41,151 nt of DNA, from positions 2,765,959-2,807,109 of the forward strand of contig NC_069008.1 of NCBI RefSeq assembly GCF_001194135.2, given 5' to 3'. Shown piece after piece: positions 13,140 to 40,282 of the stretch. The position numbers and the translations under genes were made by a program. Under the pieces are notes generated by a model. That model had not been told where the DNA came from. It saw only the letters and a program-made list of their open reading frames with translations, and did no database searches. This DNA comes from Octopus bimaculoides (Eukaryota). Each line of letters starts with the position of its first letter. Positions within the stretch are counted from its first letter, which is position 1.

Positions 13140-14290
13140 AATTCATCCATACCTTAAAGTAAATTATGTTAACAGTTACTCAAATTCATTCCCACTGCAT
13201 TGTGCGAAAGTACATTTATATGCTTGTAGGTATCTTGAGAATCTTTCAGAAATTCTATTAATAATCTTCTCATTGGTTCACAGAATAGACAGGGATTCTT
13301 CGGGCCAGAGTCGGCATCTCCTGGAAATGATATTGTATAGTTTTGCGTGCCTTACTATGGACCAAATTATGTTATACTTAATTTTATCTTCCTTCAGTCG
13401 CCACGCAAAATTGACCAAAGATGTTGAATGTCTCTTATTGATACTCATAATGCTGGTGACATGGTTACGATAAATATTCTTAAATGAATCAGCCGTTTGC
13501 CCAATGTAAACATACAGCCCTCCCCTTGTGTGCATGGTACATTTATATACAAAATTTGTACTCATACACAGGTTCATCAATGGGCATTTTGATTTTTCTC
13601 TGTATGAGCATTTATTATATTTATTTGCGTATATGGCAGTTCTGACTTCATTTTCCGACATTGTTACCGTGTTAACTATATCATAATCACTTCTACTATC
13701 ACAGTTTGGCCGTAATTGTTGCTTTTCATTGCAGTTTACATCTCCTTCGTTGGTGTTTAGACGCATATGTTTGCTAGATGCAGTAGGTGGGTTACTGAAC
13801 TACTGTCACATTTTGCTATTGTTTATGCAGTGCGTATACTGCTCAAAATTAGCAGAGTTAGCGTAGGATATCTTCACAATGTGCCGATTAAAATTAACAT
13901 GGTATCTATTAGATTTAGGAAAACATTTGTTTCAAGCAGTAAAAAATTTTCCAGCGATCTTGGTCGAAACATGTGAACCGAAAATTGAGTTGAAGCAGGG
14001 GATATCACGATTCCTATATCTGTTGTTTGGCTTATTTAATTTATTGTGTTGTACAGGATTGGAACAATTTACTGTGTTATGAGCATTTGGATTATTGTGT
14101 CGTGTGTGTCTATGAGTTTCCGTTGGTAGTTCATTGATTTGAACAATTCTTCCTGGCTTGTATTCTCGATCTGAGTAAATTCTCAAACCGTTACGTTGTC
14201 TATTCTGTGGACCAATGACAAGATCATTCATAGAATTTCTCAAAGATTGTAAAGATGCCTACATGCATATAAATGTGTACAATGTGCATT
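13140..14290 (-). mobile_element. Penelope-like element, degenerate RT C-terminus plus GIY-YIG endonuclease
   Basis: CPLMNLCMSTNFVYKCT..VYIGQTADSFKNIYRNH..STSLVNFAWRLK..IIWSI..CRLWPEE is a Penelope GIY-YIG signature; upstream RDIPCFNSIFGSHVSTKIAGKFF resembles the IIWFNPPF..V.T.IG..F motif. Confidence 0.85.
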
Positions 14291-14505: not shown

Positions 14506-14745
14506 CAAATATATATACTTACATATGCATATATGTATGTGTGTGTATGTGCGTGTGTGTCTGTGTGTGTACTTGTCCCCCAACACCGTTTGATAACCGG
14601 TGTTAGTTTGTTTATGTGCTCATAACTTGGCAGTTTGGCAGAAGGAACTGATAGAATAAGTACCAGACCTTGAGAAAAAAAAAGCAGTGGATCAATTTGT
14701 TTTGACTAAACCCTTGAAGACGATGCTCCAGCATTGCCGCAGTCC
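14305..14745 (+). mobile_element. 5'-truncated copy of the abundant tRNA-derived SINE family
   Basis: Shares GACCAA..GATTTGG..ACGGAAACTGAAAGAAG, an internal microsatellite and GATAGAATAAGTAC with the copy at 30746-31168. Confidence 0.7.
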
Positions 14746-14754
14746 AAAAGATAC

Positions 14755-15058
14755 AAACATAAATATAGCACATTATTTGCATTATTTACATTTGACGGAT
14801 GTTTGCCCTCATCTTGTTGTTAACACAACGCTTCGGCTGATATACCCTCCAGCCTTCATCAGGTGTCTTGGAGAAATTTCGAACCTGGGTTCTCATTCCT
14901 AAGGTATTTTTCGATGTTGTTGTTGTTGTTGTTATTATTATTATTATCATTATTATTATTATTATTATTACTATTATTCAGGTCACTGCCTGGAATCGAA
15001 CTCGGAATCTTGGGGTTAGTAGCCCGCGCTCTTAACTACTACGCCATATGCCTGTGGG
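14755..15058 (-). mobile_element. tRNA-headed SINE-like repeat with an (AAT)n tract; same family as 27419-28030
   Basis: Minus strand GCATATGGCGTAGTAGTTAAGAGCGCGGGCTACTAACCCCAAGATTCCGAGTTCGATTCCAGG (A and B boxes); near-identical to the copies at 27.4-28.0 kb. Confidence 0.75.
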
Positions 15059-15789
15059 TTAAAGTATGAAAAAAATAAAAATATGTTGAAATTGTACGGG
15101 AAATTCATTAAAAGAAACCTATAGTAATCTAGAATTGCAAAGGTCACATTGATTCCAAAAAGGTTAAATAATGTTTGAAACGGAAGTAGGGAAAGTNNNN
15201 NNNNNNNNNNNNNNNNNNNNNNNNNNNNNNNNNNNNNNNNNNNNNNNNNNNNNNNNNNNNNNNNNNNNNNNNNNNNNNNNNNNNNNNNNNNNNNNNNNNN
15301 NNNNNNNNNNNNNNNNNNNNNNNNNNNNNNNNNNNNNNNNNNNNNNNNNNNNNNNNNNNNNNNNNNNNNNNNNNNNNNNNNNNNNNNNNNNNNNNNNNNN
15401 NNNNNNNNNNNNNNNNNNNNNNNNNNNNNNNNNGAGAGAGAGGAGAGAGAGAGATTGTGTGTGTGTTTATGCATGTATGTGTGCACGTGTATATGCATGT
15501 ATGTGTGCACGTGTATATGCATGTATGTGCGTGTGTGAGTATGTGCATGCATGTGTGTGTATATGCATGTATGTGCGTGTGAATGCATGTATGTGTGTGT
15601 ATGCGCGTGTGTGTACATGTGTTTGTGTATGGGGGTGCGGCTAAGGGTAGTGGACAGCACCAGCCCTCGTATTTCATTGCTAGTGAATTGAATGAGAGGA
15701 AACTGGAGCGAAAAGAGAAAAAAATGTTGCTAAGCATTTTGTTGAAAGCACCAGCATTTCTGTTAGCTCACCCCTTGAAGTTACTTGTA

Positions 15790-16345: not shown

Positions 16346-17629
16346 AGAATAATATTAATAATAATCATAAATTCAAATTACGATGGACGTAAACAAACAA
16401 ACGAAGGTTGCTTTAGAAGCGTTGAGATGTTTTAGAAAGTTAAAAAAGTGATTTTTAAATTCTTAAACACAGGATAATGCTAATATGTTGGTGGCCAGCC
16501 GTCCGCCAACACTTTTTTCTGCAAAATACGGGTAGTTTATCCTGTTCAGGCTATATTATTAGCATTATCTTGCGTTTGAGAATTTAAAAACCATTAATAA
16601 TAATATTAATTTTCTGGTTTAGCTGCATGGTCAGTGATTTTGAGGAGATGAAGTTAGTTAATTACGTCAACCATAGTATTTAATTAGTGCTTAATTTTAA
16701 TAACCGTTTCTAATTTCGACACAAGGACAGTAGTTTTGAAGGGGTGGTTTGTCAAAATCATTGACAAATGGGTACTTTACTGTATTGGCCTCATAAAGAT
16801 AAAATGCAAAGACGACGTTGACAGATATTGAACTCAGAATGTAGCGAGCTGGAATAAATACCACAAGGTTCTTTGTCCAACTCTCCAATGATTTTTATAA
16901 TACACTGCCATTATAACAACAATAACAATAATAACAACAAAATACATAATGATATTTATATACAAATTTTGTTATCTTTATTTATAATGTTCCAGTTAAA
17001 TGATAAAAAACGGATATTACAATTCATACAGAGAAATTAAGGCAAATCCATCTGACATTATAATCAGAGACAACCAGGAAAATAAAAATTAAAACGTCAT
17101 TTAATTGAAGATATCAATTCGACTGCATGGCAATACATTTGAAATAGTAATAGGAAAAAGAGAGATTATTACAATAAAAAGATCTGGAAATAGAGATAAG
17201 CCGAATGTAGGGATTGAAGACAAAAACAATCTCCACAATAAAAAGTACCATCGAATGACTAATATAAGCACAGGTAGATGCATAAACAAAAGCTCCAGGA
17301 CTTATATGTATAACACACACAAAAATAGAAACATAATTATTTCTAAATCTCTCAGAGGGATATTCCGTAACAGTTAGCCAAGCAGCTACTCTGTGTTGAT
17401 AAAGAGGGTAATAACCCAGAAACCAGTCCACAGATGTTGTTTTGTGCTGGATGAGAATTGCTGAACTCCCTGTTCAAAAATAAAAGGACACAGATATCGT
17501 GTTGTATAGCTAACTAGAAACGATGTTTCTTGCGGTTAAACAACAGTAACAATCGTCCCTTCCAGGAGAACCACATTATGTTGGCAAATAGCCTTTACAT
17601 ACAAAAATAGTTATACTACTATTAATAGT

Positions 17630-17960: not shown

Positions 17961-18728
17961 ATCACTTTAGCTTTATCATTATTATTGTTATTTTTAACTT
18001 ATTTGTCAAAGTTCTTTCGTCACAGATACTGTGACCTCTTCAGTGACTCTCTCTGCCACGTGTCTCCTCTTGTCCTGTTTATCCTCTTTTGTCCTTCTGC
18101 GGAATGTATTCTATCTGCGCATGTGGTCATGTCTGTAGCTGTGTGTGTGTGTGTATGAGTTTAGTATGTGCGTCCTGTATGTGTGTGTGTGTATGTGGTT
18201 AGTATGCTCACATATGTGTATGCGTGTGTGTGTGTGTATGGGTTTGTATATTATACTGTACATTCTAATAATTTAATAAGTCCCACGGTGCTCAATGTAA
18301 CCTCTGTGCCTAATACATTGTACCTTTCACAACCCAGTAGACTGTACCAAACACAGGGTACCCTAAAAACTGTATATGTCCTGAAGCGCTGTATGCAACA
18401 TCTGTGCCTAATGCATGGTACCTAGGTACAAGTCAGCAGACTGCCAAACACAGGGTACTCTATTTAAGCAGCCAGATGGATTAACTGTAGGAACTCAGAA
18501 TAATTTCTGAAACTATGATTGATAAAGATAATTATTAAAAATCTACCCACCCTCCCATTTATACCCAACCCCGCACCTCTCACTTCTAGTCTCCACACCG
18601 GACGCCCTGTCTTCGCATCACCTCCATCACCACCACATCCATATAAGTGCGATCCCCTCCTTCATGTAGAACGGAGTCGTACTTTAATACCCGCTACACC
18701 ACCCCCACGTCGTTATCGGAAATTTTGA

Positions 18729-18815
18729 CGTTTGTTCTTCTGGTGGGGGGGAGCATCATCTTGTGCGCCGAGACCCTGTTGGGTTTTATCGGCGCCCATT
18801 CATATAGAACAAACG
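18729..18815 (-). promoter_or_regulatory. SECIS element (type 2) in the SELENOP 3' UTR
   Basis: Minus strand: CGTTTGTTCT-AT-ATGA-A-TGGGCGCCGA-T-AAA-ACCC-AACA-GGGT-C-TCGGCGCACA-A-GA-TGATG...AGAACAAACG. AUGA/GA core at 18803-18800 and 18760-18759, helix II 9/10 paired, unpaired AAA, 4-bp apical ministem, 10-bp possible helix I. Confidence 0.9.
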
Positions 18816-20045
18816 GTGGGGGGGGAACTTCCTGATAACAGACGTAGCGTTGGTGGGGGGTAGCAGATGGATAGCCGTGGTGGTGACGAGGGTGATGATA
18901 GCGGAGGAGAAGGGAGAGGTAGAAAATGNNNNNNNNNNNNNNNNNNNNNNNNNNNNNNNNNNNNNNNNNNNNNNNNNNNNNNNNNNNNNNNNNNNNNNNN
19001 NNNNNNNNNNNNNNNNNNNNNNNNNNNNNNNNNNNNNNNNNNNNNNNNNNNNNNNNNNNNNNNNNNNNNNNNNNNNNNNNNNNNNNNNNNNNNNNNNNNN
19101 NNNNNNNNNNNNNNNNNNNNNNNNNNNNNNNNNNNNNNNNNNNNNNNNNNNNNNNNNNNNNNNNNNNNNNNNNNNNNNNNNNNNNNNNNNNNNNNNNNNN
19201 NNNNNNNNNNNNNNNNNNNNNNNNNNNNNNNNNNNNNNNNNNNNNNNNNNNNNNNNNNNNNNNNNNNNNNNNNNNNNNNNNNNNNNNNNNNNNNNNNNNN
19301 NNNNNNNNNNNNNNNNNNNNNNNNNNNNNNNNNNNNNNNNNNNNNNNNNNNNNNNNNNNNNNNNNNNNNNNNNNNNNNNNNNNNNNNNNNNNNNNNNNNN
19401 NNNNNNNNNNNNNNNNNNNNNNNNNNNNNNNNNNNNNNNNNNNNNNNNNNNNNNNNNNNNNNNNNNNNNNNNNNNNNNNNNNNNNNNNNNNNNNNNNNNN
19501 NNNNNNNNNNNNNNNNNNNNNNNNNNNNNNNNNNNNNNNNNNNNNNNNNNNNNNNNNNNNNNNNNNNNNNNNNNNNNNNNNNNNNNNNNNNNNNNNTAGA
19601 TATATATATATATATAGATATATATATACATATATATATATATATTTAAAGAAGATAAGAAAATAGAGAGATAAATGAATAAATAATTATCTATTAATTG
19701 TCTCTCTATTTTCGTATCTTCTTCAAATATATATAAAACCACGGTTTATCTAGTTACCTTGCAGGTGAATATTAATTATAACATTCAACACTTCTTGAAT
19801 AGGTAACTCACTAGTATTTTCATTGGATTTTGTCATCCCTTAAAGAGGTTTGTAACCTTTATTTGAACTTCTATATACATATATATATTTAATCAACTAG
19901 GTCTACTATATATTATGCATTCGTTATCATATACAGTATTCTGTACATCTACGGAATCATGGGTGATTTGTGAACAACAACAACAACAACACCAACAACA
20001 GTAGCATCAATCAGTGCAACCTTGTGCAACCTTTTCAGGAAGCGT

Positions 20046-22672
20046 CTAATCTTCGCTCATATTCGGGATGTTACTGAAGACATATTCAAAGAATTTCTGA
20101 ATCTTGCGAGCCAGCGCCTTATGTTCATTTCTCTTCCGGTCAGCAGGAGCTGGTTTTTGGCATAGCAACCTTCATCATTGCCAGGATATTGGTCAGAAGT
20201 GAGCTGGAGTTGTTCCGACTGTTGATTCCTCTAGCGCTGGTCATTGTCAGATGGTGGACCCAATGGGTGGTCAGGAAGAAGGCGTGACTGAACAGAAGGG
20301 TGGTCAGCTGGTCAGGTCTTTCTTGTTGTCTGAATCTCGCTGCTGATTGTGACTGGTGGAATTGGTCTGGAGTTGTCATAGTCATGGTCAGTCGGACATA
20401 GTGGCCACATGGACCTTTGCAGCCTGACCAACTTCTTTACCTCACTGCCATCCCGCGGACAGTCTGTGTCATTGTCAACTGGTCATCTTGACCTCCCCAT
20501 TCTGACCAACTCCCTTGGGTCATTGTCACACTGCCATACTAGGTCATTGTCAACTGGTCACCTTCACCTCTCCATTCTGACCAACTTCCTTGGATCATTG
20601 TCACACTGCCATACTAGGTCATTGTCAACTGGTCACCTTCACCTCTCCATTCTGACCAGCTCCCTTGGATCATTGTCACACTGNNNNNNNNNNTCACCTC
20701 TCCATTCTGACCAGCTCCCTTGGATCATTGTCACACTGCCATACTAGGTCATTGTCAACTGGTCATCTTGACCTCTCCATTCTGACCAGCTCCCTTGGAT
20801 CATTGTCACATGGTAACACTAGACCACTGTCAGCTTGTTGAATTGACCTTTCCTGCTTCGTCCACACCCTTAAGTCACTGTCATGCCACACCATTAGGTG
20901 TCTGTCAACTGGACAGCTCAGGCAATCCAGTCATGTCTGTTCCATTGGGTCACTGTCAGGTGGAAAGCGTCAGTCGACAGCGACGTATGTTACTGTAGCC
21001 CAAATTCTGTGAGGTTCAGAAATGAGTGGAGTTGCTGCAATTATTGGCTGTGGGTATATTGAGAACCTCTGATGTCACATTGGTCAGGCTGGTGTTGAGG
21101 AGCTCGGGTCAACATCACGTGACTCTACACTTAGTCACGTTGTTATTGCTGCTGCTGATGTTGCTGCATAGCGGCATCAGTGACAACGTTGAGCTGATTT
21201 CGTATTCCGTCTGAGATTGGTCCTTGGCACCATCTTCGTCGCAGTTTTTGTTGTTGTCGGTAGAGGCTGTGTAAGTAACATTGTTGCCATTAGAAGTGGT
21301 GGTGGATGCTGTGATGTTTCTGGTAATGTTGCTGCCGTTGTTTGCAGATGTCATGTTCTTACAGCCATCAAAATCATTGTTGTTGGTGGCGGTGGTAGTG
21401 GTGGTAGCAATAGGTGTAGCCTCGCCTTTGTCACCCTTGATGACAATGTTATTGTTATTGCGATACTGTTGCTGCTGCTGGTTGCTGGAAGACGCTGCAA
21501 TGACATCAGGTAGCTGTGCACCGGTTTCATTTCTGCATACGCAGTACATATGTTTGTAGACTGAATGCAACAAAGCACGGAGTTTACAGTTACACGGCAC
21601 CGGGAGACTTAGTACAACAGTTTCATCTCCATCAAATAACACAGGATCTGTTGTTGTTATCGGTTTTTTTTCCAACGTGTTATTCTTGTTTTTGGCAGCA
21701 GTGCTGGTACCAATATTCTTCACAGTGGCCGCGTCAACATCTGTCTTAGTGTGGTTGCGGTGACGGACACCGCTTTGGACAGTGTCTCGGAGACGGTCGT
21801 CGTGGTCTTGGATGCGATGGTTACGGTTGAGCTGACCGAGAGCTGGGGCCCGGTGGAGAAGGAAGCGACACTGTCACGTCTGAATGATTTTGTAGCGGTC
21901 CTGCTGCAGCTGTGGTGGACATTGGCAAAACGAGTCTGATGCTGTCTTTTGCTGCTGCTTCCGCTGAAGCTTCCCCTCCACTCCCTTCTCCTCTTCTTCA
22001 CCTTGTTGATGATGAGACGGAGGATAATGTTGATGGCGATGAGAATGATGCGGGTAATTGCTGTTATGATGCAACTGTTGTTGCTGATAGTGTCGATGAG
22101 GATCATTATTATTATTGTTATTATTATGAGGATGTTGATTGACGTGCTGGGAGATGTGCTGGCCATGCTGTTGATGATGAGGCGAATGTCGGTTGCCTTT
22201 GCCGTGGCTGCCCTTTCTCCGAGTTTTCTGTTCGGTGTGACAGGAACCAGTGTTGTTACCAGGCATGAAATAACACACCAGCTTCTTGAATGGCTTAACA
22301 GAATGAGACGTCGATGATGATGACGATGACGATGACGACAATGTTGATGAGAAAGAAGAAGAACCAACGGAAGCAGAAAACGGAAACAGTAGCGTATGAT
22401 GCTTGATGAGCCAGTTACTCAAGGTGGACGTTTTTGGATTGTACCTGTACACGTATTTCTTTTGCGGTTTCTTCTTTGGCAGTGACATTGCCGACACCGT
22501 GTACATGCGCCGCACTCAAGCACGGAATTTCGATGTCTGCTGGTAGTTGAATAGGTTGCCTAGCATGCAGTTGCACAAGTTGAAGTAGTACGACATGCAG
22601 ATACCTTTGTGGACGTTGAGCGTGGAAACGGGAGCCTGCGATTGGTTGAAGCGAAACGTCTGACGACCGCAC
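20046..22672 (-). CDS. SELENOP: Selenoprotein P, last coding exon (40 in-frame TGA read as Sec; terminal TAG at 20048-20046)
   Basis: Acceptor ttttacctttacgcag|G TGC GGT. (R)CGRQTFRFNQSQAPVSTLNVHKGICMSYYFNLCNC aligns with vertebrate RCGRLVYHLGLPFSFLTFPYVEEAIKIAYCEKKCGNC. No TAA/TAG in about 875 codons; His-rich region; UQU/UQUPS repeats. The frame shifts across the 10-N gap at 20684-20693, so the gap length is treated as arbitrary. Confidence 0.93.
20470..20812 (-). repeat. 75-bp coding tandem repeat (25 aa, 4 Sec per unit) inside SELENOP
   Basis: Unit TGACAATGACCTAGTATGGCAGTGTGACAATGATCCAAGGRAGYTGGTCAGAATGGAGAGGTSAAGRTGACCAGT = UQUPSMAVUQUSK(G/E)(A/V)GQNGEVK(V/M)TS; about 4.5 visible copies, interrupted by a 10-N gap. 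Confidence 0.92.
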
Positions 22673-23475: not shown

Positions 23476-23676
23476 CTATCGTAGAGGATGATGTCATTGT
23501 TGGAGCCTCGTAACTTCTTCCATATCCTCCGATGTAGAGAATCTTGGTAGACAGGGATACTTGTCTCCCTTCTCAGCTGATGAAGTTTACGTTTTGCTGA
23601 TGGGAAGAAAGAATTGACGATGCGGAACTTGACAAACTCCCGATTGGTTTGCAGCATGTGATGTATCTTCTCCAGC
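23476..23676 (-). CDS. SELENOP: Selenoprotein P, internal exon of the thioredoxin-like domain (201 bp, phase 2/2)
   Basis: ttccattacaccag|G...GAT AG|gtaatt. LEKIHHMLQTNREFVKFRIVNSFFPSAKRKLHQLRRETSIPVYQDSLHRRIWKKLRGSNNDIILYDR aligns with vertebrate LEDLRVKL..IVVN..HIPVYQQ..VWTLLNGSKDDFLIYDR. Confidence 0.93.
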
Positions 23677-24094: not shown

Positions 24095-24346
24095 TCAACG
24101 ATGTTCTTTAATCATGGTTTTCAGTTTGCACTGAAGAGGCCAACGACAGTCGGGTGACCTGCAGTGTTGGCCATAGGATTAGCTAGCGCCCCATTGCTCC
24201 AGTTGGGCATGACTTTGCAGTTGCCATTACCCCGGTTCAGCCTTGCCGGTGACACGCCTGTCACGACGACAAGCAAGGCGAGAGTCAGTGTGATGGCCAC
24301 ATTTGAGATGGCTCCTCCTCCACCTCCTCCTCCTCCTCCTCCTCCT
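24095..24346 (-). CDS. SELENOP: Selenoprotein P, first visible coding exon (signal peptide and UxxU motif); start codon hidden in gap 24347-25119
   Basis: G11-AISNVAITLTLALLVVVTGVSPARLNRGNGNCKVMPNWSNGALANPMANTAGHPTVVGLFSAN-U-KP-U-LKNIVE, donor GA|gtgagt. Aligns with human CKQPPAWSIRDQDPMLNSNGSVTVVALLQAS-U-YL-C-ILQASK. TGA at 24123-24121 and 24114-24112. Confidence 0.92.
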
Positions 24347-25119
24347 NNNNNNNNNNNNNNNNNNNNNNNNNNNNNNNNNNNNNNNNNNNNNNNNNNNNNN
24401 NNNNNNNNNNNNNNNNNNNNNNNNNNNNNNNNNNNNNNNNNNNNNNNNNNNNNNNNNNNNNNNNNNNNNNNNNNNNNNNNNNNNNNNNNNNNNNNNNNNN
24501 NNNNNNNNNNNNNNNNNNNNNNNNNNNNNNNNNNNNNNNNNNNNNNNNNNNNNNNNNNNNNNNNNNNNNNNNNNNNNNNNNNNNNNNNNNNNNNNNNNNN
24601 NNNNNNNNNNNNNNNNNNNNNNNNNNNNNNNNNNNNNNNNNNNNNNNNNNNNNNNNNNNNNNNNNNNNNNNNNNNNNNNNNNNNNNNNNNNNNNNNNNNN
24701 NNNNNNNNNNNNNNNNNNNNNNNNNNNNNNNNNNNNNNNNNNNNNNNNNNNNNNNNNNNNNNNNNNNNNNNNNNNNNNNNNNNNNNNNNNNNNNNNNNNN
24801 NNNNNNNNNNNNNNNNNNNNNNNNNNNNNNNNNNNNNNNNNNNNNNNNNNNNNNNNNNNNNNNNNNNNNNNNNNNNNNNNNNNNNNNNNNNNNNNNNNNN
24901 NNNNNNNNNNNNNNNNNNNNNNNNNNNNNNNNNNNNNNNNNNNNNNNNNNNNNNNNNNNNNNNNNNNNNNNNNNNNNNNNNNNNNNNNNNNNNNNNNNNN
25001 NNNNNNNNNNNNNNNNNNNNNNNNNNNNNNNNNNNNNNNNNNNNNNNNNNNNNNNNNNNNNNNNNNNNNNNNNNNNNNNNNNNNNNNNNNNNNNNNNNNN
25101 NNNNNNNNNNNNNNNNNNN

Positions 25120-28739: not shown

Positions 28740-29805
28740 GGTGAAACAGTAAACAGAGAATGAACACTGAGTAAATACAGGTTGAAAAATAAATGAACAG
28801 TGAAGGTGAGGTAGTCACAGTAAACTAGAAACTAATCAATACAGGACAGTGAACATTTGGATGAACATGAAGTGAACAAAATGTGAAAAATAGGAAAGAG
28901 GTGGTTAATCAATCGATAGGGACAAGGGAGAATGCATAAATGAACATATAGGGAACAGAAAGTGAACAGTTGAGGGAGAAAGACGTGTATTGAACAGGTT
29001 GACAGTGAACAAAATATAACAAAATACAGGGGATGCAGTGAACTGGTAATTAACGAAAGGAAAGCAGAGTGAACAGTTGGGTGAACACAAAATAAATGGA
29101 AGTTGGACAGAAAGCAAACAAGAGATGGCACAATACAAGAATGAACATATCAAAGACGAGGCAGAAAAGTGGGGTCAAAAGAAGGTGAGTAGAAGTGGAG
29201 CAAGAGATAAACGGTTCAGACAAATGTCAGAATCATGTAAACATTGTGAGAGTTGGAGGAACACAAGATTAAACACATCAAAGACCAGACAGGTATGAAG
29301 GTTGGTGAACAGAAAGTAGACAGAGGGTGAACAGAAAGTGGGCAGAGGGTGAACAGAAAGTGGACAGAGGGTGAACAGATAGGGGATGGGGTTGAGCAGA
29401 GGGCGAACAGGAAGCGAATGGGGATATACAGAAAGTGAACAGAGGGTGAACGGTGTGAATGGAGAGAGCAGAGTGTGAACAGAAAGTGAACAGAGGGTGA
29501 ACGGTATGAATGGAGCGAGCAGAGTGTGAACAGGGGAAAAGTGAACAGAGGGTAAAGAGAGTGAGTGGGGGTGGATAGAGGGTGAACAGAAAGTGAAGTG
29601 GGGGTGAGTAGAGGGTGAACAGAAAGGAATGAGAGTGAACCCAGAGTGAACAGAGAGCAAACAGAGTGAAGAGAAAATGAATTGGGGGAGGGGGGAGTGA
29701 ATGGAGAGCAAACAGATAGTGAATGGGAGTGAGCAGGAGGTGAACAGAAGGTGAACAGAAGGTGAACAAAGGATGAACAGAAGGTGAACAAAGGACGAAC
29801 AGAAA
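28740..29805. repeat. Purine-rich degenerate GTGAACAG(A/G) repeat field (intronic)
   Basis: Dozens of GTGAACAGA/GTGAACAAA motifs with strong A/G strand bias. Confidence 0.8.
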
Positions 29806-29821
29806 AGCATATGGGCCTCAC

Positions 29822-29957
29822 CAATGTTGGAACTAACTGTGGCCGGTTTTTCTTGACTATCCGTACGGCGTTCATTATGTCGACCTCCCTATCTTCCTTC
29901 AGCCGGTCACAACATATACTGATAGCGGAGAACATGCCACACCTACTGTAACCATCT
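29822..29957 (-). CDS. Receptor-type PTP, D2 signature exon (136 bp)
   Basis: ttttccag|A GAT...TTG|gtgagg; DGYSRCGMFSAISICCDRLKEDREVDIMNAVRIVKKNRPQLVPTL matches the PTP G..R.G...VD....V...R..RP motif. Confidence 0.92.
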
Positions 29958-30745: not shown

Positions 30746-30907
30746 GCAGGAGTTGCTGTGTGGTAAGTAGCTTGCTTACCAGCCACATGGTTCCGGGTTC
30801 ATTCCCACTGCATGGCACCTTGGGGAAGTGTCTTCAACTATAGCCTCGGGCCGACCAAAGCCTTGTGAGTTGATTTGATAGACGGAAACTGAAAGAAGCC
30901 CACCATA

Positions 30908-33360: not shown

Positions 33361-34799
33361 GACCTAAATCCAAGGCCTTTGCCAGGGGTGTAGCCAGCCC
33401 ACTTATGCGTATTAGACACTAAACTTCACTTGCGAAGACCTGTTGAGGCAAGGGAAATCGAAATCGAACTAAATTCGACAACTGGCACACATGCCAATGT
33501 CGTCTTCTTCATTGGACACGAAACTCGGCTTGCGAAGACCTGTTGAGGCAGGTGAAGTCGAAATCGTAATGGCATCTGTGCCCAGCGTCGCCTTCCTGGC
33601 ACTTGTGCCAGTGGCACATGTAAAGACATTCAAGCGAGATCATTGCCAGTGCTGCTGGATTGGCTCCTGTGCATGTGGCACGTAAAATACAACATTTTGA
33701 GCATAGCCGTTGCCAGTACCGTCTGACTGGCCTTCGTGCCGGTGGCACGTAAAAGCACCCACTACACTNNNNNNNNNNNNNNNNNNNNNNNNNNNNNNNN
33801 NNNNNNNNNNNNNNNNNNNNNNNNNNNNNNNNNNNNNNNNNNNNNNNNNNNNNNNNNNNNNNNNNNNNNNNNNNNNNNNNNNNNNNNNNNNNNNNNNNNN
33901 NNNNNNNNNNNNNNNNNNNNNNNNNNNNNNNNNNNNNNNNNNNNNNNNNNNNNNNNNNNNNNNNNNNNNNNNNNNNNNNNNNNNNNNNNNNNNNNNNNNN
34001 NNNNNNNNNNNNNNNNNNNNNNNNNNNNNNNNNNNNNNNNNNNNNNNNNNNNNNNNNNNNNNNNNNNNNNNNNNNNNNNNNNNNNNNNNNNNNNNNNNNN
34101 NNNNNNNNNNNNNNNNNNNNNNNNNNNNNNNNNNNNNNNNNNNNNNNNNNNNNNNNNNNNNNNNNNNNNNNNNNNNNNNNNNNNNNNNNNNNNNNNNNNN
34201 NNNNNNNNNNNNNNNNNNNNNNNNNNNNNNNNNNNNNNNNNNNNNNNNNNNNNNNNNNNNNNNNNNNNNNNNNNNNNNNNNNNNNNNNNNNNNNNNNNNN
34301 NNNNNNNNNNNNNNNNNNNNNNNNNNTTAGTACTTAATCTATCGGTCTCTTTTTGCCGAACCGCTAAGTTACGGGGACGTAAACACACCAGCATCGGTTG
34401 TCAAGCGATGTTGGGGAGACAAACACAGACACACACATATATATATATACATATACATATATACGACGTGTTTCTTTCAGTTTCCATCTACCAAATCCAC
34501 TCACAAGGCTTTGGTCAGCCCGAAGCTATAGTAGAAGACCCTTACCCAAGGTGCCACGCAGTGGGACTGAACCCGGAACCATGTGGTTCGTAAGCAAGCT
34601 ACTTACCACACAGCCACTCCTACGCCTGGACAGCTTTGAGTAAAAACAGTGCATGTATGTATGCATACATATCCATGTTGCTGTAAGTATGCACATAGCT
34701 GTGTATCATGTGCATTGCTCAATGTGTGGAGACAAGGAATGGGGTTAATGAGCTGAGAGAAATTTAGCTAATTGTTGCTTTAATTATGCAAATTACTGG

Positions 34800-37320: not shown

Positions 37321-37628
37321 CTTCTCCAGTGGTTCTCAGCCGAGATCCATATAAGATTTGGGGGGGGGGGACACACAAACAAAATAGAAAATTAGAGATC
37401 CACAATAATATTTTTAGTAGAAGACACTTGCCCAAGGTGCCACGCAGTGGGACTGAACCCAGAACCATGTGGTTGGTAAGCAAGCTACTTACCACACAGT
37501 CACTCCTGCACCTATAATACTATCATAATACTGTTCTACAGGCATACCAACAATCCAACATACCTCCATCATCAGCTGCCCCACATATATCATTATGGTT
37601 TCGACACCTGGATAGTACCATTCAATCC

Positions 37629-39936: not shown

Positions 39937-40282
39937 TACAACAAGCTTCTTTCAGTTTCCGTCAACCAAATCCACTCACAAGACTTTGGTCAGCCCGAGG
40001 CTATAGTAGAAGGCACCTGCCCAAGGTGCCACGCAGTGGGACTGAACCCGGAACCATGTGGTTGGTAAGCAAGCTACTTACCACACAGCCACTCGGAGAG
40101 CAGGCTGCCGTTGCTACAATCATTTCTAGCCACTGTCTAGAGATCTCCATTACTGGCTGACACATACATATGTACTAGATAAGAGAGCAAGGTGTGATGT
40201 GAGGGAGGTTTGGCTGCTGTTTCTAGAGAATCTAGTATCCACATAGAGACTCCTTCTTTTGACCTCTTGGTGGGTAGTTAGT

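What the first reader, a model, noticed from the sequence alone, without database searches (positions are those of the whole stretch)
18729..18815. Canonical type-2 SECIS about 1.2 kb downstream of the stop; only one visible for 42 UGAs
Seen: AUGA/GA core, a 10-bp helix II with one mismatch, an AAA bulge, an ACCC/GGGT ministem and a 10-bp flanking helix. This independently supports Sec decoding. Established: vertebrate SELENOP mRNAs carry two SECIS elements with different roles. Inference: a second SECIS may lie in the 668-N gap 18929-19596; otherwise one SECIS would support all 42 insertions, which would be notable.
Basis: partly seen in the sequence, partly recalled or inferred. Interest (0 to 1): 0.7.

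Follow-up and report, generated by a model that had tools for sequence, protein, structure and literature searches.

The report
Octopus selenoprotein P SECIS element
This is a genuine-looking selenocysteine-insertion hairpin (SECIS) at the end of the Octopus bimaculoides selenoprotein P gene, an expected part of such a gene; an assembly gap prevents deciding whether it alone serves all 42 UGA codons.

Summary
On the minus strand at 18815-18729 there is an AUGA…AAA…GA hairpin with a 10-position helix II (one G·A mismatch), an ACCC/GGGU ministem and a perfect 10-bp outer helix.

It lies about 1.23 kb, gap included, downstream of the UAG stop of a three-exon SelenoP gene with 42 in-frame UGAs. 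The window is Octopus bimaculoides.

Evidence that it is real:
- None of 300 dinucleotide shuffles of the visible downstream sequence gave a candidate as good.
- Rfam SECIS_1 is the top family for the 71-nt element, aligned end to end, but at 14.8 bits against a cut-off of 35.
- The collinear Argonauta hians gene has the same element about 1.1 kb after its stop, with core and AAA conserved and two compensatory pair changes in helix II.

A poly(A) signal follows closely in both species, so this is the 3'-most element.

"Only one visible" also holds. A relaxed scanner that flagged 4 of 4 control SelenoP SECIS (fox, Owenia) found no other credible candidate.

The 668-N gap lies between the stop and this SECIS, and I could not fill it. 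A hidden second SECIS is more likely (about 0.65) than a sole SECIS (about 0.25).

This is an ordinary new member of a known kind.

The parts
24095..24345 (-). SelenoP coding exon with the signal-peptide-like segment and the UKPU (Sec-x-x-Sec) redox motif. The start codon is not visible, because the exon abuts gap 24347-25119.
   Evidence: tblastn with human SELENOP. Translation and the GT donor are shown. The exon is collinear with Argonauta L001 9914-10024.
23476..23676 (-). SelenoP exon 2, encoding the N-terminal thioredoxin-like domain.
   Evidence: It is 100% identical to a UniRef O. bimaculoides 'Selenoprotein P N-terminal domain' protein matching Pfam PF04592.
20046..22672 (-). Last SelenoP exon, coding part. 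It contains the His-rich region and the Sec-rich tail built from UQUP/UQUS modules, and ends at UAG 20048-20046. A 10-N gap at 20684-20693 lies inside a 75-nt tandem module and shifts the apparent frame.
   Evidence: 40 of the 42 UGAs are in this exon; tandem repeats with a 75-nt period.
19597..20045 (-). Proximal visible 3'UTR, AT-rich, with no credible SECIS. It contains AATAAA at 19863, ATTAAA at 19893 and an AT-rich hairpin at 19721-19651.
18929..19596 (.). Assembly gap of 668 N between the stop codon and the SECIS. It is the only place upstream of the SECIS where a second element could hide.
18729..18815 (-). Type-2 SECIS element. Its parts are helix I (18815-18806 with 18738-18729), AUGA (18803-18800), helix II (18798-18789 with 18771-18762), AAA (18787-18785), the ministem (18784-18781 with 18776-18773) and GA (18760-18759). 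A C-rich one-sided loop lies at 18758-18739.
   Evidence: The orthologue is covered.
18683..18688 (-). ATTAAA poly(A)-signal hexamer, 71 nt 3' of the SECIS GA.
   Evidence: In Argonauta an AATAAA starts 3 nt after the GA.
18616..18897 (-). Imperfect palindrome of about 280 nt that places the SECIS at the tip of a long hairpin. The outer arms are 18897-18856 and 18657-18616 (71% complementary); the middle arms are 18839-18826 and 18725-18712.
   Evidence: MFE -125.7 kcal/mol, z = -5.5. The palindrome is absent in Argonauta.

Best explanation
The hairpin at 18815-18729 (minus strand) is a functional type-2 SECIS element in the 3'UTR of the Octopus bimaculoides selenoprotein P mRNA.

**Inferred mechanism, from established SECIS biology**
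- The AUGA/GA strands form the tandem sheared G·A kink-turn core, which SECIS-binding protein 2 recognises.
- Helix II places the unpaired AAA about one and a half helical turns above the core.
- The complex recruits eEFSec with Sec-tRNA(Sec) to ribosomes translating the upstream ORF, so that UGA is read as selenocysteine.

**Position and number of elements**
- A poly(A) signal follows the element within about 70 nt, so it is the 3'-most element of the mRNA.
- The sequence cannot show whether it is the only SECIS.
- I judge it more likely (about 0.65) that a second, proximal SECIS lies in the 668-N gap, as in other multi-Sec SelenoP mRNAs.

**Shown here:** the anatomy, the non-random fold, the gene context and the conservation with covariation.

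**Inferred:** SBP2 binding, recoding activity, the extent of the mRNA and the content of the gap.
For: **Sequence anatomy**
- All SECIS parts are present with the right spacing. There are 12 nt between UGA and AAA, helix II pairs at 9 of 10 positions, and a ministem is present.

**Chance**
- None of 300 shuffles reached the real score.
- Fold z-scores are -4.1.

**Gene context**
- The element is on the same strand as, and downstream of, a three-exon SelenoP gene. That gene has a UxxU motif, a His-rich region and a Sec-rich tail: 42 UGAs and no UAA or UAG until the stop.

**Family model**
- When the 71-nt element is searched alone, the best of 4227 Rfam families is SECIS_1. It aligns over model positions 1-64, with AUGA, AAA, the ministem and GAU in register.

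**Orthologue**
- Argonauta hians L001 has collinear exons.
- An AUGA…AAA…GA hairpin lies at L001 14699-14744, about 1.1 kb after its stop.
- All 10 helix II pairs form there.
- Relative to octopus there are two changes on both sides (C-G to A-U and C-G to U-A), one G-C to G·U change, and one G·A to G-C change.

**Poly(A) signals**
- ATTAAA lies 71 nt after the octopus GA, and AATAAA 3 nt after the Argonauta GA.
- This mirrors the human poly(A) site just 3' of SECIS 2 (PMC5133445) and the fox locus.
Against: - Rfam SECIS_1 scores 14.8 bits against a gathering score of 35. It is not reported at all in 279-nt, 7-kb or whole-window searches. The Argonauta copy is not matched.
- The controls soften this. 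Fox SECIS 1 and Owenia SECIS 1 score 34.7 and 34.4 bits, also below 35, and fox SECIS 2 is not detected.
- The K position of the KGAW core is A in octopus and C in Argonauta.
- Helix I is displaced by a long one-sided loop in octopus and is not evident in Argonauta.
- There is no transcript evidence that the mRNA reaches 18729. AATAAA and ATTAAA hexamers also occur 150-185 nt after the stop.
- Only one other species was available for covariation.
Confidence: 0.88

Rival explanations
1. This is the sole SECIS of the mRNA. One element directs selenocysteine insertion at all 42 or more UGAs, by processive recoding after a single SECIS-dependent event.
For: - No other credible SECIS lies in the 449 nt after the stop, in the 113 nt before the element, or in about 3.3 kb downstream of it. 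The same relaxed scanner flagged 4 of 4 control SelenoP SECIS starts in fox and Owenia.
- The gap-free Argonauta orthologue has exactly one SECIS.
- The element is type 2. In the two controls examined here, the proximal SECIS is the one aligned by Rfam SECIS_1 with its ministem, while the Owenia distal candidate folds as a plain apical loop.
- Mouse data point to SECIS 1 as the element that drives decoding of the distal UGAs. Without it, SECIS 2 yields almost only short forms. A human mRNA isoform lacking SECIS 2 also exists (PMC5133445).
Against: - A 668-N gap covers just over half (54%) of the interval between the stop and the SECIS.
- Other multi-Sec SelenoP genes have two SECIS: lamprey with 162 UGAs and 'other SELENOP genes' (PMC13134290), mammals (PMC5133445), and Owenia with 162 UGAs here.
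- Argonauta has only 3 UGAs and no Sec-rich tail, so it says little about a 42-UGA mRNA.
Confidence: 0.25
2. The hairpin is not a SECIS. It is the centre of a lineage-specific palindromic or foldback repeat that resembles one by chance.
For: - It sits at the tip of an imperfect palindrome of about 280 nt that is absent in Argonauta.
- Its Rfam score is below threshold.
- The K position is non-consensus.
Against: - None of 300 shuffles matched it.
- The core 50 nt are conserved in Argonauta with compensatory changes, while the surrounding UTR gives no other alignment in the same searches.
- The flanking arm sequence is unique in the window.
- The strand and position are those expected for a gene that needs a SECIS.
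Confidence: 0.04
3. The SECIS belongs to a different, unrecognised selenoprotein transcript downstream of SelenoP rather than to SelenoP.
For: The 668-N gap, and poly(A) hexamers 150-185 nt after the SelenoP stop, would allow a short SelenoP mRNA.
Against: - No other UGA-containing conserved ORF lies between the stop and the SECIS on the minus strand.
- Argonauta shows the same arrangement without any gap or intervening gene.
Confidence: 0.03

Closest known systems
Argonauta hians SelenoP SECIS (L001 14699-14744; GCA_054771915.1, BAAFZT010000055.1)
   Same: It is the direct orthologue. The exons are collinear, and the element lies on the same strand about 1.1 kb after the stop. AUGA, the GAUAAA stretch and GAUGA are identical. 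Helix II has 10 pairs, kept through two compensatory changes. A poly(A) signal follows directly.
   Different: - One bulged G in helix II.
- A weaker ministem of 2-3 pairs.
- No long outer helix or palindrome.
- The gene has only 3 UGAs (UKSC, KGIU, FRAU) and no Sec-rich tail.
Vertebrate SELENOP SECIS 1 (form 2), for example fox L005 16526-16589
   Same: It is a type-2 SECIS in a SelenoP 3'UTR, with AUGA, unpaired AAA, a ministem and GA. It aligns to the same Rfam model from end to end.
   Different: - The fox element scores 34.7 bits against 14.8 here, because its helix I directly abuts the core.
- The vertebrate SECIS 1 is proximal and is followed by SECIS 2. The octopus element is followed by a poly(A) signal, as vertebrate SECIS 2 is.
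Owenia fusiformis SelenoP proximal SECIS (L004 14638-14701)
   Same: It comes from a lophotrochozoan multi-Sec SelenoP. The apex is nearly identical: AAAACCCAAAGGU against AAAACCCAACAGGGU.
   Different: - The Owenia element lies 100 nt after the stop and is followed 380 nt later by a second candidate with a GUGA core and a plain apical loop.
- Its helix II is AU-rich.
Vertebrate selenoprotein Pb (single UGA, single SECIS; PMC5133445)
   Same: It is a precedent for a SelenoP-family mRNA with only one SECIS. It resembles the Argonauta gene.
   Different: SelPb has a single UGA, whereas the octopus gene has 42.

Membership tests
Eukaryotic SECIS element (Rfam RF00031 / SECISearch3 definition) | Kink-turn core with tandem G·A/A·G pairs, consensus UGAN on the 5' strand and KGAW on the 3' strand (PMC3753652). 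| tested here: met
   The 5' strand reads AUGAA and the 3' strand reads AGAU. UGA, GA and W are as in the consensus. The K position is A in octopus and C in Argonauta, a deviation at the least conserved position of the core.
Eukaryotic SECIS element (Rfam RF00031 / SECISearch3 definition) | A helix II of defined length separating the core from conserved unpaired adenines at the apex. | tested here: met
   Helix II has 10 positions, 9 of them paired. There are 12 nt between UGA and an unpaired AAA. The constrained fold energy is -17.9 kcal/mol.
Eukaryotic SECIS element (Rfam RF00031 / SECISearch3 definition) | Type 2: an additional short helix above the conserved adenines. | tested here: met
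   An ACCC/GGGU ministem closes the tetraloop AACA.
Eukaryotic SECIS element (Rfam RF00031 / SECISearch3 definition) | Helix I closing the internal loop below the core. | tested here: inconclusive
   A perfect 10-bp helix exists (I5), but it is offset by a one-sided 3' loop of 16-20 nt. The Rfam alignment marks the helix I positions as non-pairs. No clear helix I is seen in Argonauta.
Eukaryotic SECIS element (Rfam RF00031 / SECISearch3 definition) | A covariance-model score at or above the family's gathering score. | tested here: not met
   The score is 14.8 bits against 35. SECIS_1 is the top family only when 71 nt are searched. It is absent from larger searches. In the controls, fox SECIS 1 scores 34.7 bits, Owenia SECIS 1 scores 34.4, and fox SECIS 2 is not found. 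This model alone is therefore a weak judge.
Eukaryotic SECIS element (Rfam RF00031 / SECISearch3 definition) | Location in the 3'UTR of a gene with an in-frame UGA, on the coding strand. | tested here: met
   It lies downstream of the SelenoP stop at 20048-20046 on the minus strand, and the gene has 42 UGAs. The extent of the mRNA itself cannot be tested here.
Eukaryotic SECIS element (Rfam RF00031 / SECISearch3 definition) | Conservation in orthologues, with the structure kept through compensatory change. | tested here: met
   Octopus against Argonauta shows two changes on both sides of a pair, one G-C to G·U change, and no disrupted pair in helix II. Only two species were available.
Eukaryotic SECIS element (Rfam RF00031 / SECISearch3 definition) | Binds SBP2 and supports Sec insertion at UGA. 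| not testable with these tools
   This needs a reporter, 75Se-labelling or binding assay.
Dual-SECIS 3'UTR architecture of multi-Sec SelenoP | Two SECIS elements downstream of the stop codon. | tested here: inconclusive
   One element is visible. The 668-N gap at 18929-19596 lies between the stop and that element. The gap could not be filled.
Dual-SECIS 3'UTR architecture of multi-Sec SelenoP | A poly(A) signal shortly 3' of the distal SECIS. | tested here: met
   ATTAAA is at 18688-18683, 71 nt after the GA. The fox distal SECIS is likewise followed by AAATAAA within about 70 nt. PMC5133445 reports the same for human.

The most novel reading that the evidence does not exclude
The octopus SelenoP mRNA has a single SECIS: a type-2 element presented at the tip of an unusually long hairpin of about 280 nt. 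This one element supports processive selenocysteine insertion at 42 or more UGAs. That would make it a natural exception to the two-SECIS rule for multi-Sec SelenoP.
Probability: 0.25. Interest if true: 0.6.

Novelty: new member of a known kind. Interest (0 to 1): 0.3.

Why it matters
The SECIS supports, independently of the coding sequence, reading the 42 UGAs as selenocysteine codons. It also anchors the 3' end of a gene that public annotation shows only as a 112-residue fragment.

In itself it is what every selenoprotein gene must have.

The one point of wider interest is the number of elements. If a gap-free sequence showed no second SECIS, octopus would offer a natural test of whether one element suffices for highly processive UGA recoding. 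In mammals that question has so far been addressed with deletion mutants (PMC5133445).

Tried and rejected
**Rfam searches**
- Searches at the gathering threshold and at E <= 10 on the whole window, on 7 kb and on 279 nt gave no SECIS hit. Only the 71-nt search listed SECIS_1.

**Attempts to fill the 668-N gap or find more cephalopod orthologues**
- A protein search with the 252-aa tail-proximal ORF returned only the window's own protein.
- Look-ups of P0004 and P0001 found no contig.
- A profile search returned mostly vertebrate SelenoP and no further cephalopod.
- The Logan transcripts L002 and L003, from a distant multi-Sec SelenoP, end about 160 nt after the stop, before any SECIS.

**Literature**
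- The key survey paper (Baclaocos et al. 2019, PMC6885538) and PMC7409585 are not held.

**Synteny**
- RPL37 flanks the Argonauta gene but is not in the window. Orthology therefore rests on collinear exons.

**Other SECIS-like candidates, all rejected**
- Minus 19811-19749: GUGA core, only a 6-bp helix, -5.8 kcal/mol.
- Minus 13081-13030: GUGA core, built on a TG repeat, 5.7 kb away.
- Minus 20175-20102 and 20604-20526: inside the CDS and branched.
- Minus 18759-18677: reuses the 3' side of the real element.
- Several plus-strand and intronic hits.

**Alignment and models**
- MAFFT alignments A1 and A2 misplace the Argonauta bulge. I therefore made the pair table on a hand alignment checked by script.
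- I did not build a covariance model of my own.

Full report
**What the window is**

The window is a draft scaffold with 20 runs of N. A 163-residue translation of its minus strand is 100% identical, over the 69% of it that aligns, to a UniRef protein named 'Selenoprotein P N-terminal domain-containing protein' from Octopus bimaculoides. It is 67% identical to an Argonauta hians protein, and both match Pfam PF04592.

- 24345-24095, ending in …SANUKPULKNIVE.
- 23676-23476.
- A last exon starting at 22672.

The last exon carries a His-rich stretch and a Sec-rich tail of UQUP/UQUS modules. It ends at UAG 20048-20046.

A 10-N gap at 20684-20693 lies inside a 75-nt tandem module and shifts the apparent frame. 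I count 42 in-frame UGAs and no UAA or UAG in the visible coding sequence. Because the 10-N gap sits in a repeat, 42 is not a final number.

**The observation**

- Outer helix: CGUUUGUUCU (18815-18806) pairs perfectly with AGAACAAACG (18738-18729).
- AUGA: 18803-18800.
- Helix II: 18798-18789 with 18771-18762, ten positions, nine paired, one G·A.
- Unpaired AAA: 18787-18785.
- Ministem: ACCC/GGGU closing the loop AACA.
- GA: 18760-18759.

The distance from the stop is 1,231 nt with the 668 N counted.

Three details qualify 'canonical':
- The base before the 3' GA is A. The published core consensus is UGAN/KGAW (PMC3753652).
- The 10-bp outer helix is separated from the core by a C-rich one-sided loop of 16-20 nt.
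- The Rfam score is below threshold (see below).

**Is it more than chance?**

The 87-nt stretch folds with z = -4.1.

I wrote a SECIS pattern-plus-energy scanner. It requires NUGA, a forced helix II, unpaired AA 9-13 nt from the core, and GA. Over both strands of the whole window it returns ten candidates. Only the one at 18803-18759 is an unbranched arm with a type-2 apex, at -17.9 kcal/mol.

I made 300 dinucleotide-preserving shuffles of the 3.9 kb of visible sequence downstream of the stop. None produced a hit as good, and six produced any hit at -12 kcal/mol or better.

**Rfam**

SECIS_1 is not reported at the gathering threshold. It is also not reported at E <= 10 in 7-kb or 279-nt searches.

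When only 71 nt are searched, SECIS_1 is the best of 4227 families, at 14.8 bits against a gathering score of 35 and E = 1.2. It aligns over the full model, with AUGA, AAA, the ministem and GAU in register. The lost score is in helix I.

Controls show that this model is a weak judge:
- The proximal SECIS of fox SELENOP scores 34.7 bits.
- The proximal SECIS of the annelid Owenia scores 34.4 bits.
- Both are also below 35.
- The fox distal SECIS is not found at all.

**Comparative evidence**

The Argonauta hians locus L001 has no gaps. Its three coding exons are collinear with the octopus exons.

A sensitive blastn of the octopus 3'UTR against L001 returned one non-repeat match in the expected region. 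Octopus 18803-18774 matched L001 14699-14728, weak on its own at E = 0.13. This lies on the coding strand, about 1.1 kb after the Argonauta stop (UAG at 13574).

The sequence there is AUGA-CUGGGAGUCGAU-AAA…UUGACGUCCCAC-GA. My scanner and RNAfold both recover it.

On a structure-aware alignment, all ten helix II pairs form in Argonauta, with one bulged G. Relative to octopus:
- Two pairs change on both sides (C-G to A-U and C-G to U-A).
- One pair changes G-C to G·U.
- The octopus G·A mismatch is a G-C pair in Argonauta.
- AUGA, GAUAAA and GAUGA are identical.

Around this island, the dust-filtered search gave no 3'UTR match apart from shared repeats. With only two species the covariation is modest. 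Still, every change is in the direction a SECIS predicts.

**Position in the mRNA**

In octopus an ATTAAA hexamer lies 71 nt 3' of the GA (18688-18683). In Argonauta an AATAAA begins 3 nt after the GA.

The fox distal SECIS is likewise followed by AAATAAA within about 70 nt. The human poly(A) site is described as lying just 3' of SECIS 2 (PMC5133445).

The octopus element is therefore the 3'-most element of the transcript. This is an inference from hexamers, with no cDNA behind it.

**Is it the only SECIS?**

In the visible sequence, yes.

A relaxed scan was run over 20045-19597, 18928-15434 and 15196-12893. It allowed any NUGA, an AA or CC apex, -5 kcal/mol and six pairs. It returned only weak, branched or repeat-based candidates besides the real one.

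The same settings flagged all four control starts:
- Owenia proximal SECIS.
- Owenia distal SECIS.
- Fox SECIS 1.
- Fox SECIS 2, though with the wrong 3' partner.

The 668-N gap covers just over half (54%) of the stop-to-SECIS interval and could easily hold an element of about 90 nt. The gap lengths in this scaffold vary, so they look like size estimates rather than placeholders.

The protein databases hold no other octopus copy of this locus.

**Weighing one SECIS against two**

For two:
- Lamprey SELENOP genes, with 162 and 139 UGAs, are reported with two SECIS, 'analogously to other SELENOP genes' (PMC13134290).
- Mammals have two, with distinct roles (PMC5133445).
- The Owenia gene I fetched has 162 in-frame UGAs and two SECIS candidates, 100 and 480 nt after the stop.

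For one:
- Nothing else is visible.
- The gap-free Argonauta gene has exactly one.
- The octopus element is type 2. In the fox and Owenia controls the proximal SECIS is the one that matches the Rfam model with its ministem, and the Owenia distal candidate folds with a plain apical loop.
- In mice, SECIS 1 is inferred to mediate efficient decoding of the distal UGAs (PMC5133445).

Argonauta, however, has only three UGAs (UKSC, KGIU, FRAU) and no Sec-rich tail. It behaves like a short SelenoP and says little about a 42-UGA mRNA.

My estimates:
- About 0.65 that a second SECIS is in the gap.
- About 0.25 that this is the sole SECIS.
- The remainder for a missed or non-canonical element elsewhere.

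**An unexpected detail**

The octopus SECIS sits at the centre of nested inverted repeats that extend to 18897-18856 and 18657-18616. The 316-nt stretch folds into one long hairpin at -125.7 kcal/mol, z = -5.5, with the SECIS at its tip.

Argonauta has nothing comparable. The 5' arm resembles the CAC/CAT-rich sequence upstream of the Argonauta SECIS, and the 3' arm is its imperfect complement. That suggests an inverted duplication in the octopus lineage.

If the ATTAAA at 18688 is used, the outermost arm would not be in the mRNA. I attach no function to the palindrome.

**Verdict**

This is a real and expected regulatory element: a new member of a known kind. It may already be catalogued in the metazoan SelenoP survey, which I could not read.

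The interesting possibility, one SECIS for 42 UGAs, is neither shown nor excluded.

Noticed in passing
L004 11200-14538 (+), Owenia fusiformis GCA_903813345.2: The SelenoP gene of this annelid has a single open frame of 1,113 codons with 162 in-frame UGAs and no UAA or UAG. Two SECIS candidates follow, at 14638-14701 (Rfam SECIS_1, 34.4 bits) and 15019-15059 (GUGA core, plain apical loop). The count equals the lamprey figure quoted in PMC13134290 and exceeds the 132 in the title of the mollusc paper.
   Followed up: partly
L001 9653-13576 (+), Argonauta hians: The Argonauta SelenoP orthologue has only three UGAs. It has UKSC where octopus has UKPU, and KGIU where octopus has KGIC. It has no Sec-rich tail: the frame ends at UAG 13574 and is followed by two copies of a repeat. 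This looks like loss of the selenium-transport domain in this lineage.
   Followed up: partly
window 18616-18897 (-): The SECIS lies at the tip of an imperfect palindrome of about 280 nt (z = -5.5) that is absent in Argonauta. C-rich direct repeats (CCCCCCCACC) flank the core on both sides, and a G-rich complement lies at 18708-18699.
   Followed up: partly
window 19651-19721 (-): A near-perfect AT-rich inverted repeat lies in the proximal 3'UTR. Rfam lists it as mir-556-like at 33 bits (gathering score 84). It is probably a simple foldback repeat.
   Followed up: no
window 20468-20853 (-), including the 10-N gap 20684-20693: The Sec-rich tail is built of 75-nt (25-codon) tandem modules, each with four UGAs. 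The 10-N gap sits inside the array, so repeat copies may be collapsed and the true UGA count may differ from 42.
   Followed up: partly
window 24095-24346 (-) and gap 24347-25119: No in-frame AUG is visible for SelenoP. The exon runs into a GGA repeat and then into a 773-N gap. The public protein for this gene is a 112-residue fragment.
   Followed up: no
window about 29241-29948 (+): A purine-rich minisatellite (GC skew 0.44, AT skew 0.44) whose frames are full of UGA (…UTESEQRVNG… repeats). I saw no sign that it is a gene.
   Followed up: no
window 30756-30901, 34472-34613, 37440-37500, 39945-40088; L001 4036-4144, 8577-8685, 15142-16242, 16640-16750: SINE-like repeats joined to units spaced 52 nt apart in L001 are shared between the octopus window and the Argonauta locus at 80-90% identity.
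   Followed up: no
L005 16250-17250 (+), Vulpes lagopus SELENOP: Rfam SECIS_1 scores the fox SECIS 1 at 34.7 bits, just under its own gathering score of 35. It does not report the distal SECIS 2 (AUGA at 16958) at all. This is a useful caution when Rfam alone is used to judge SECIS candidates.
   Followed up: yes
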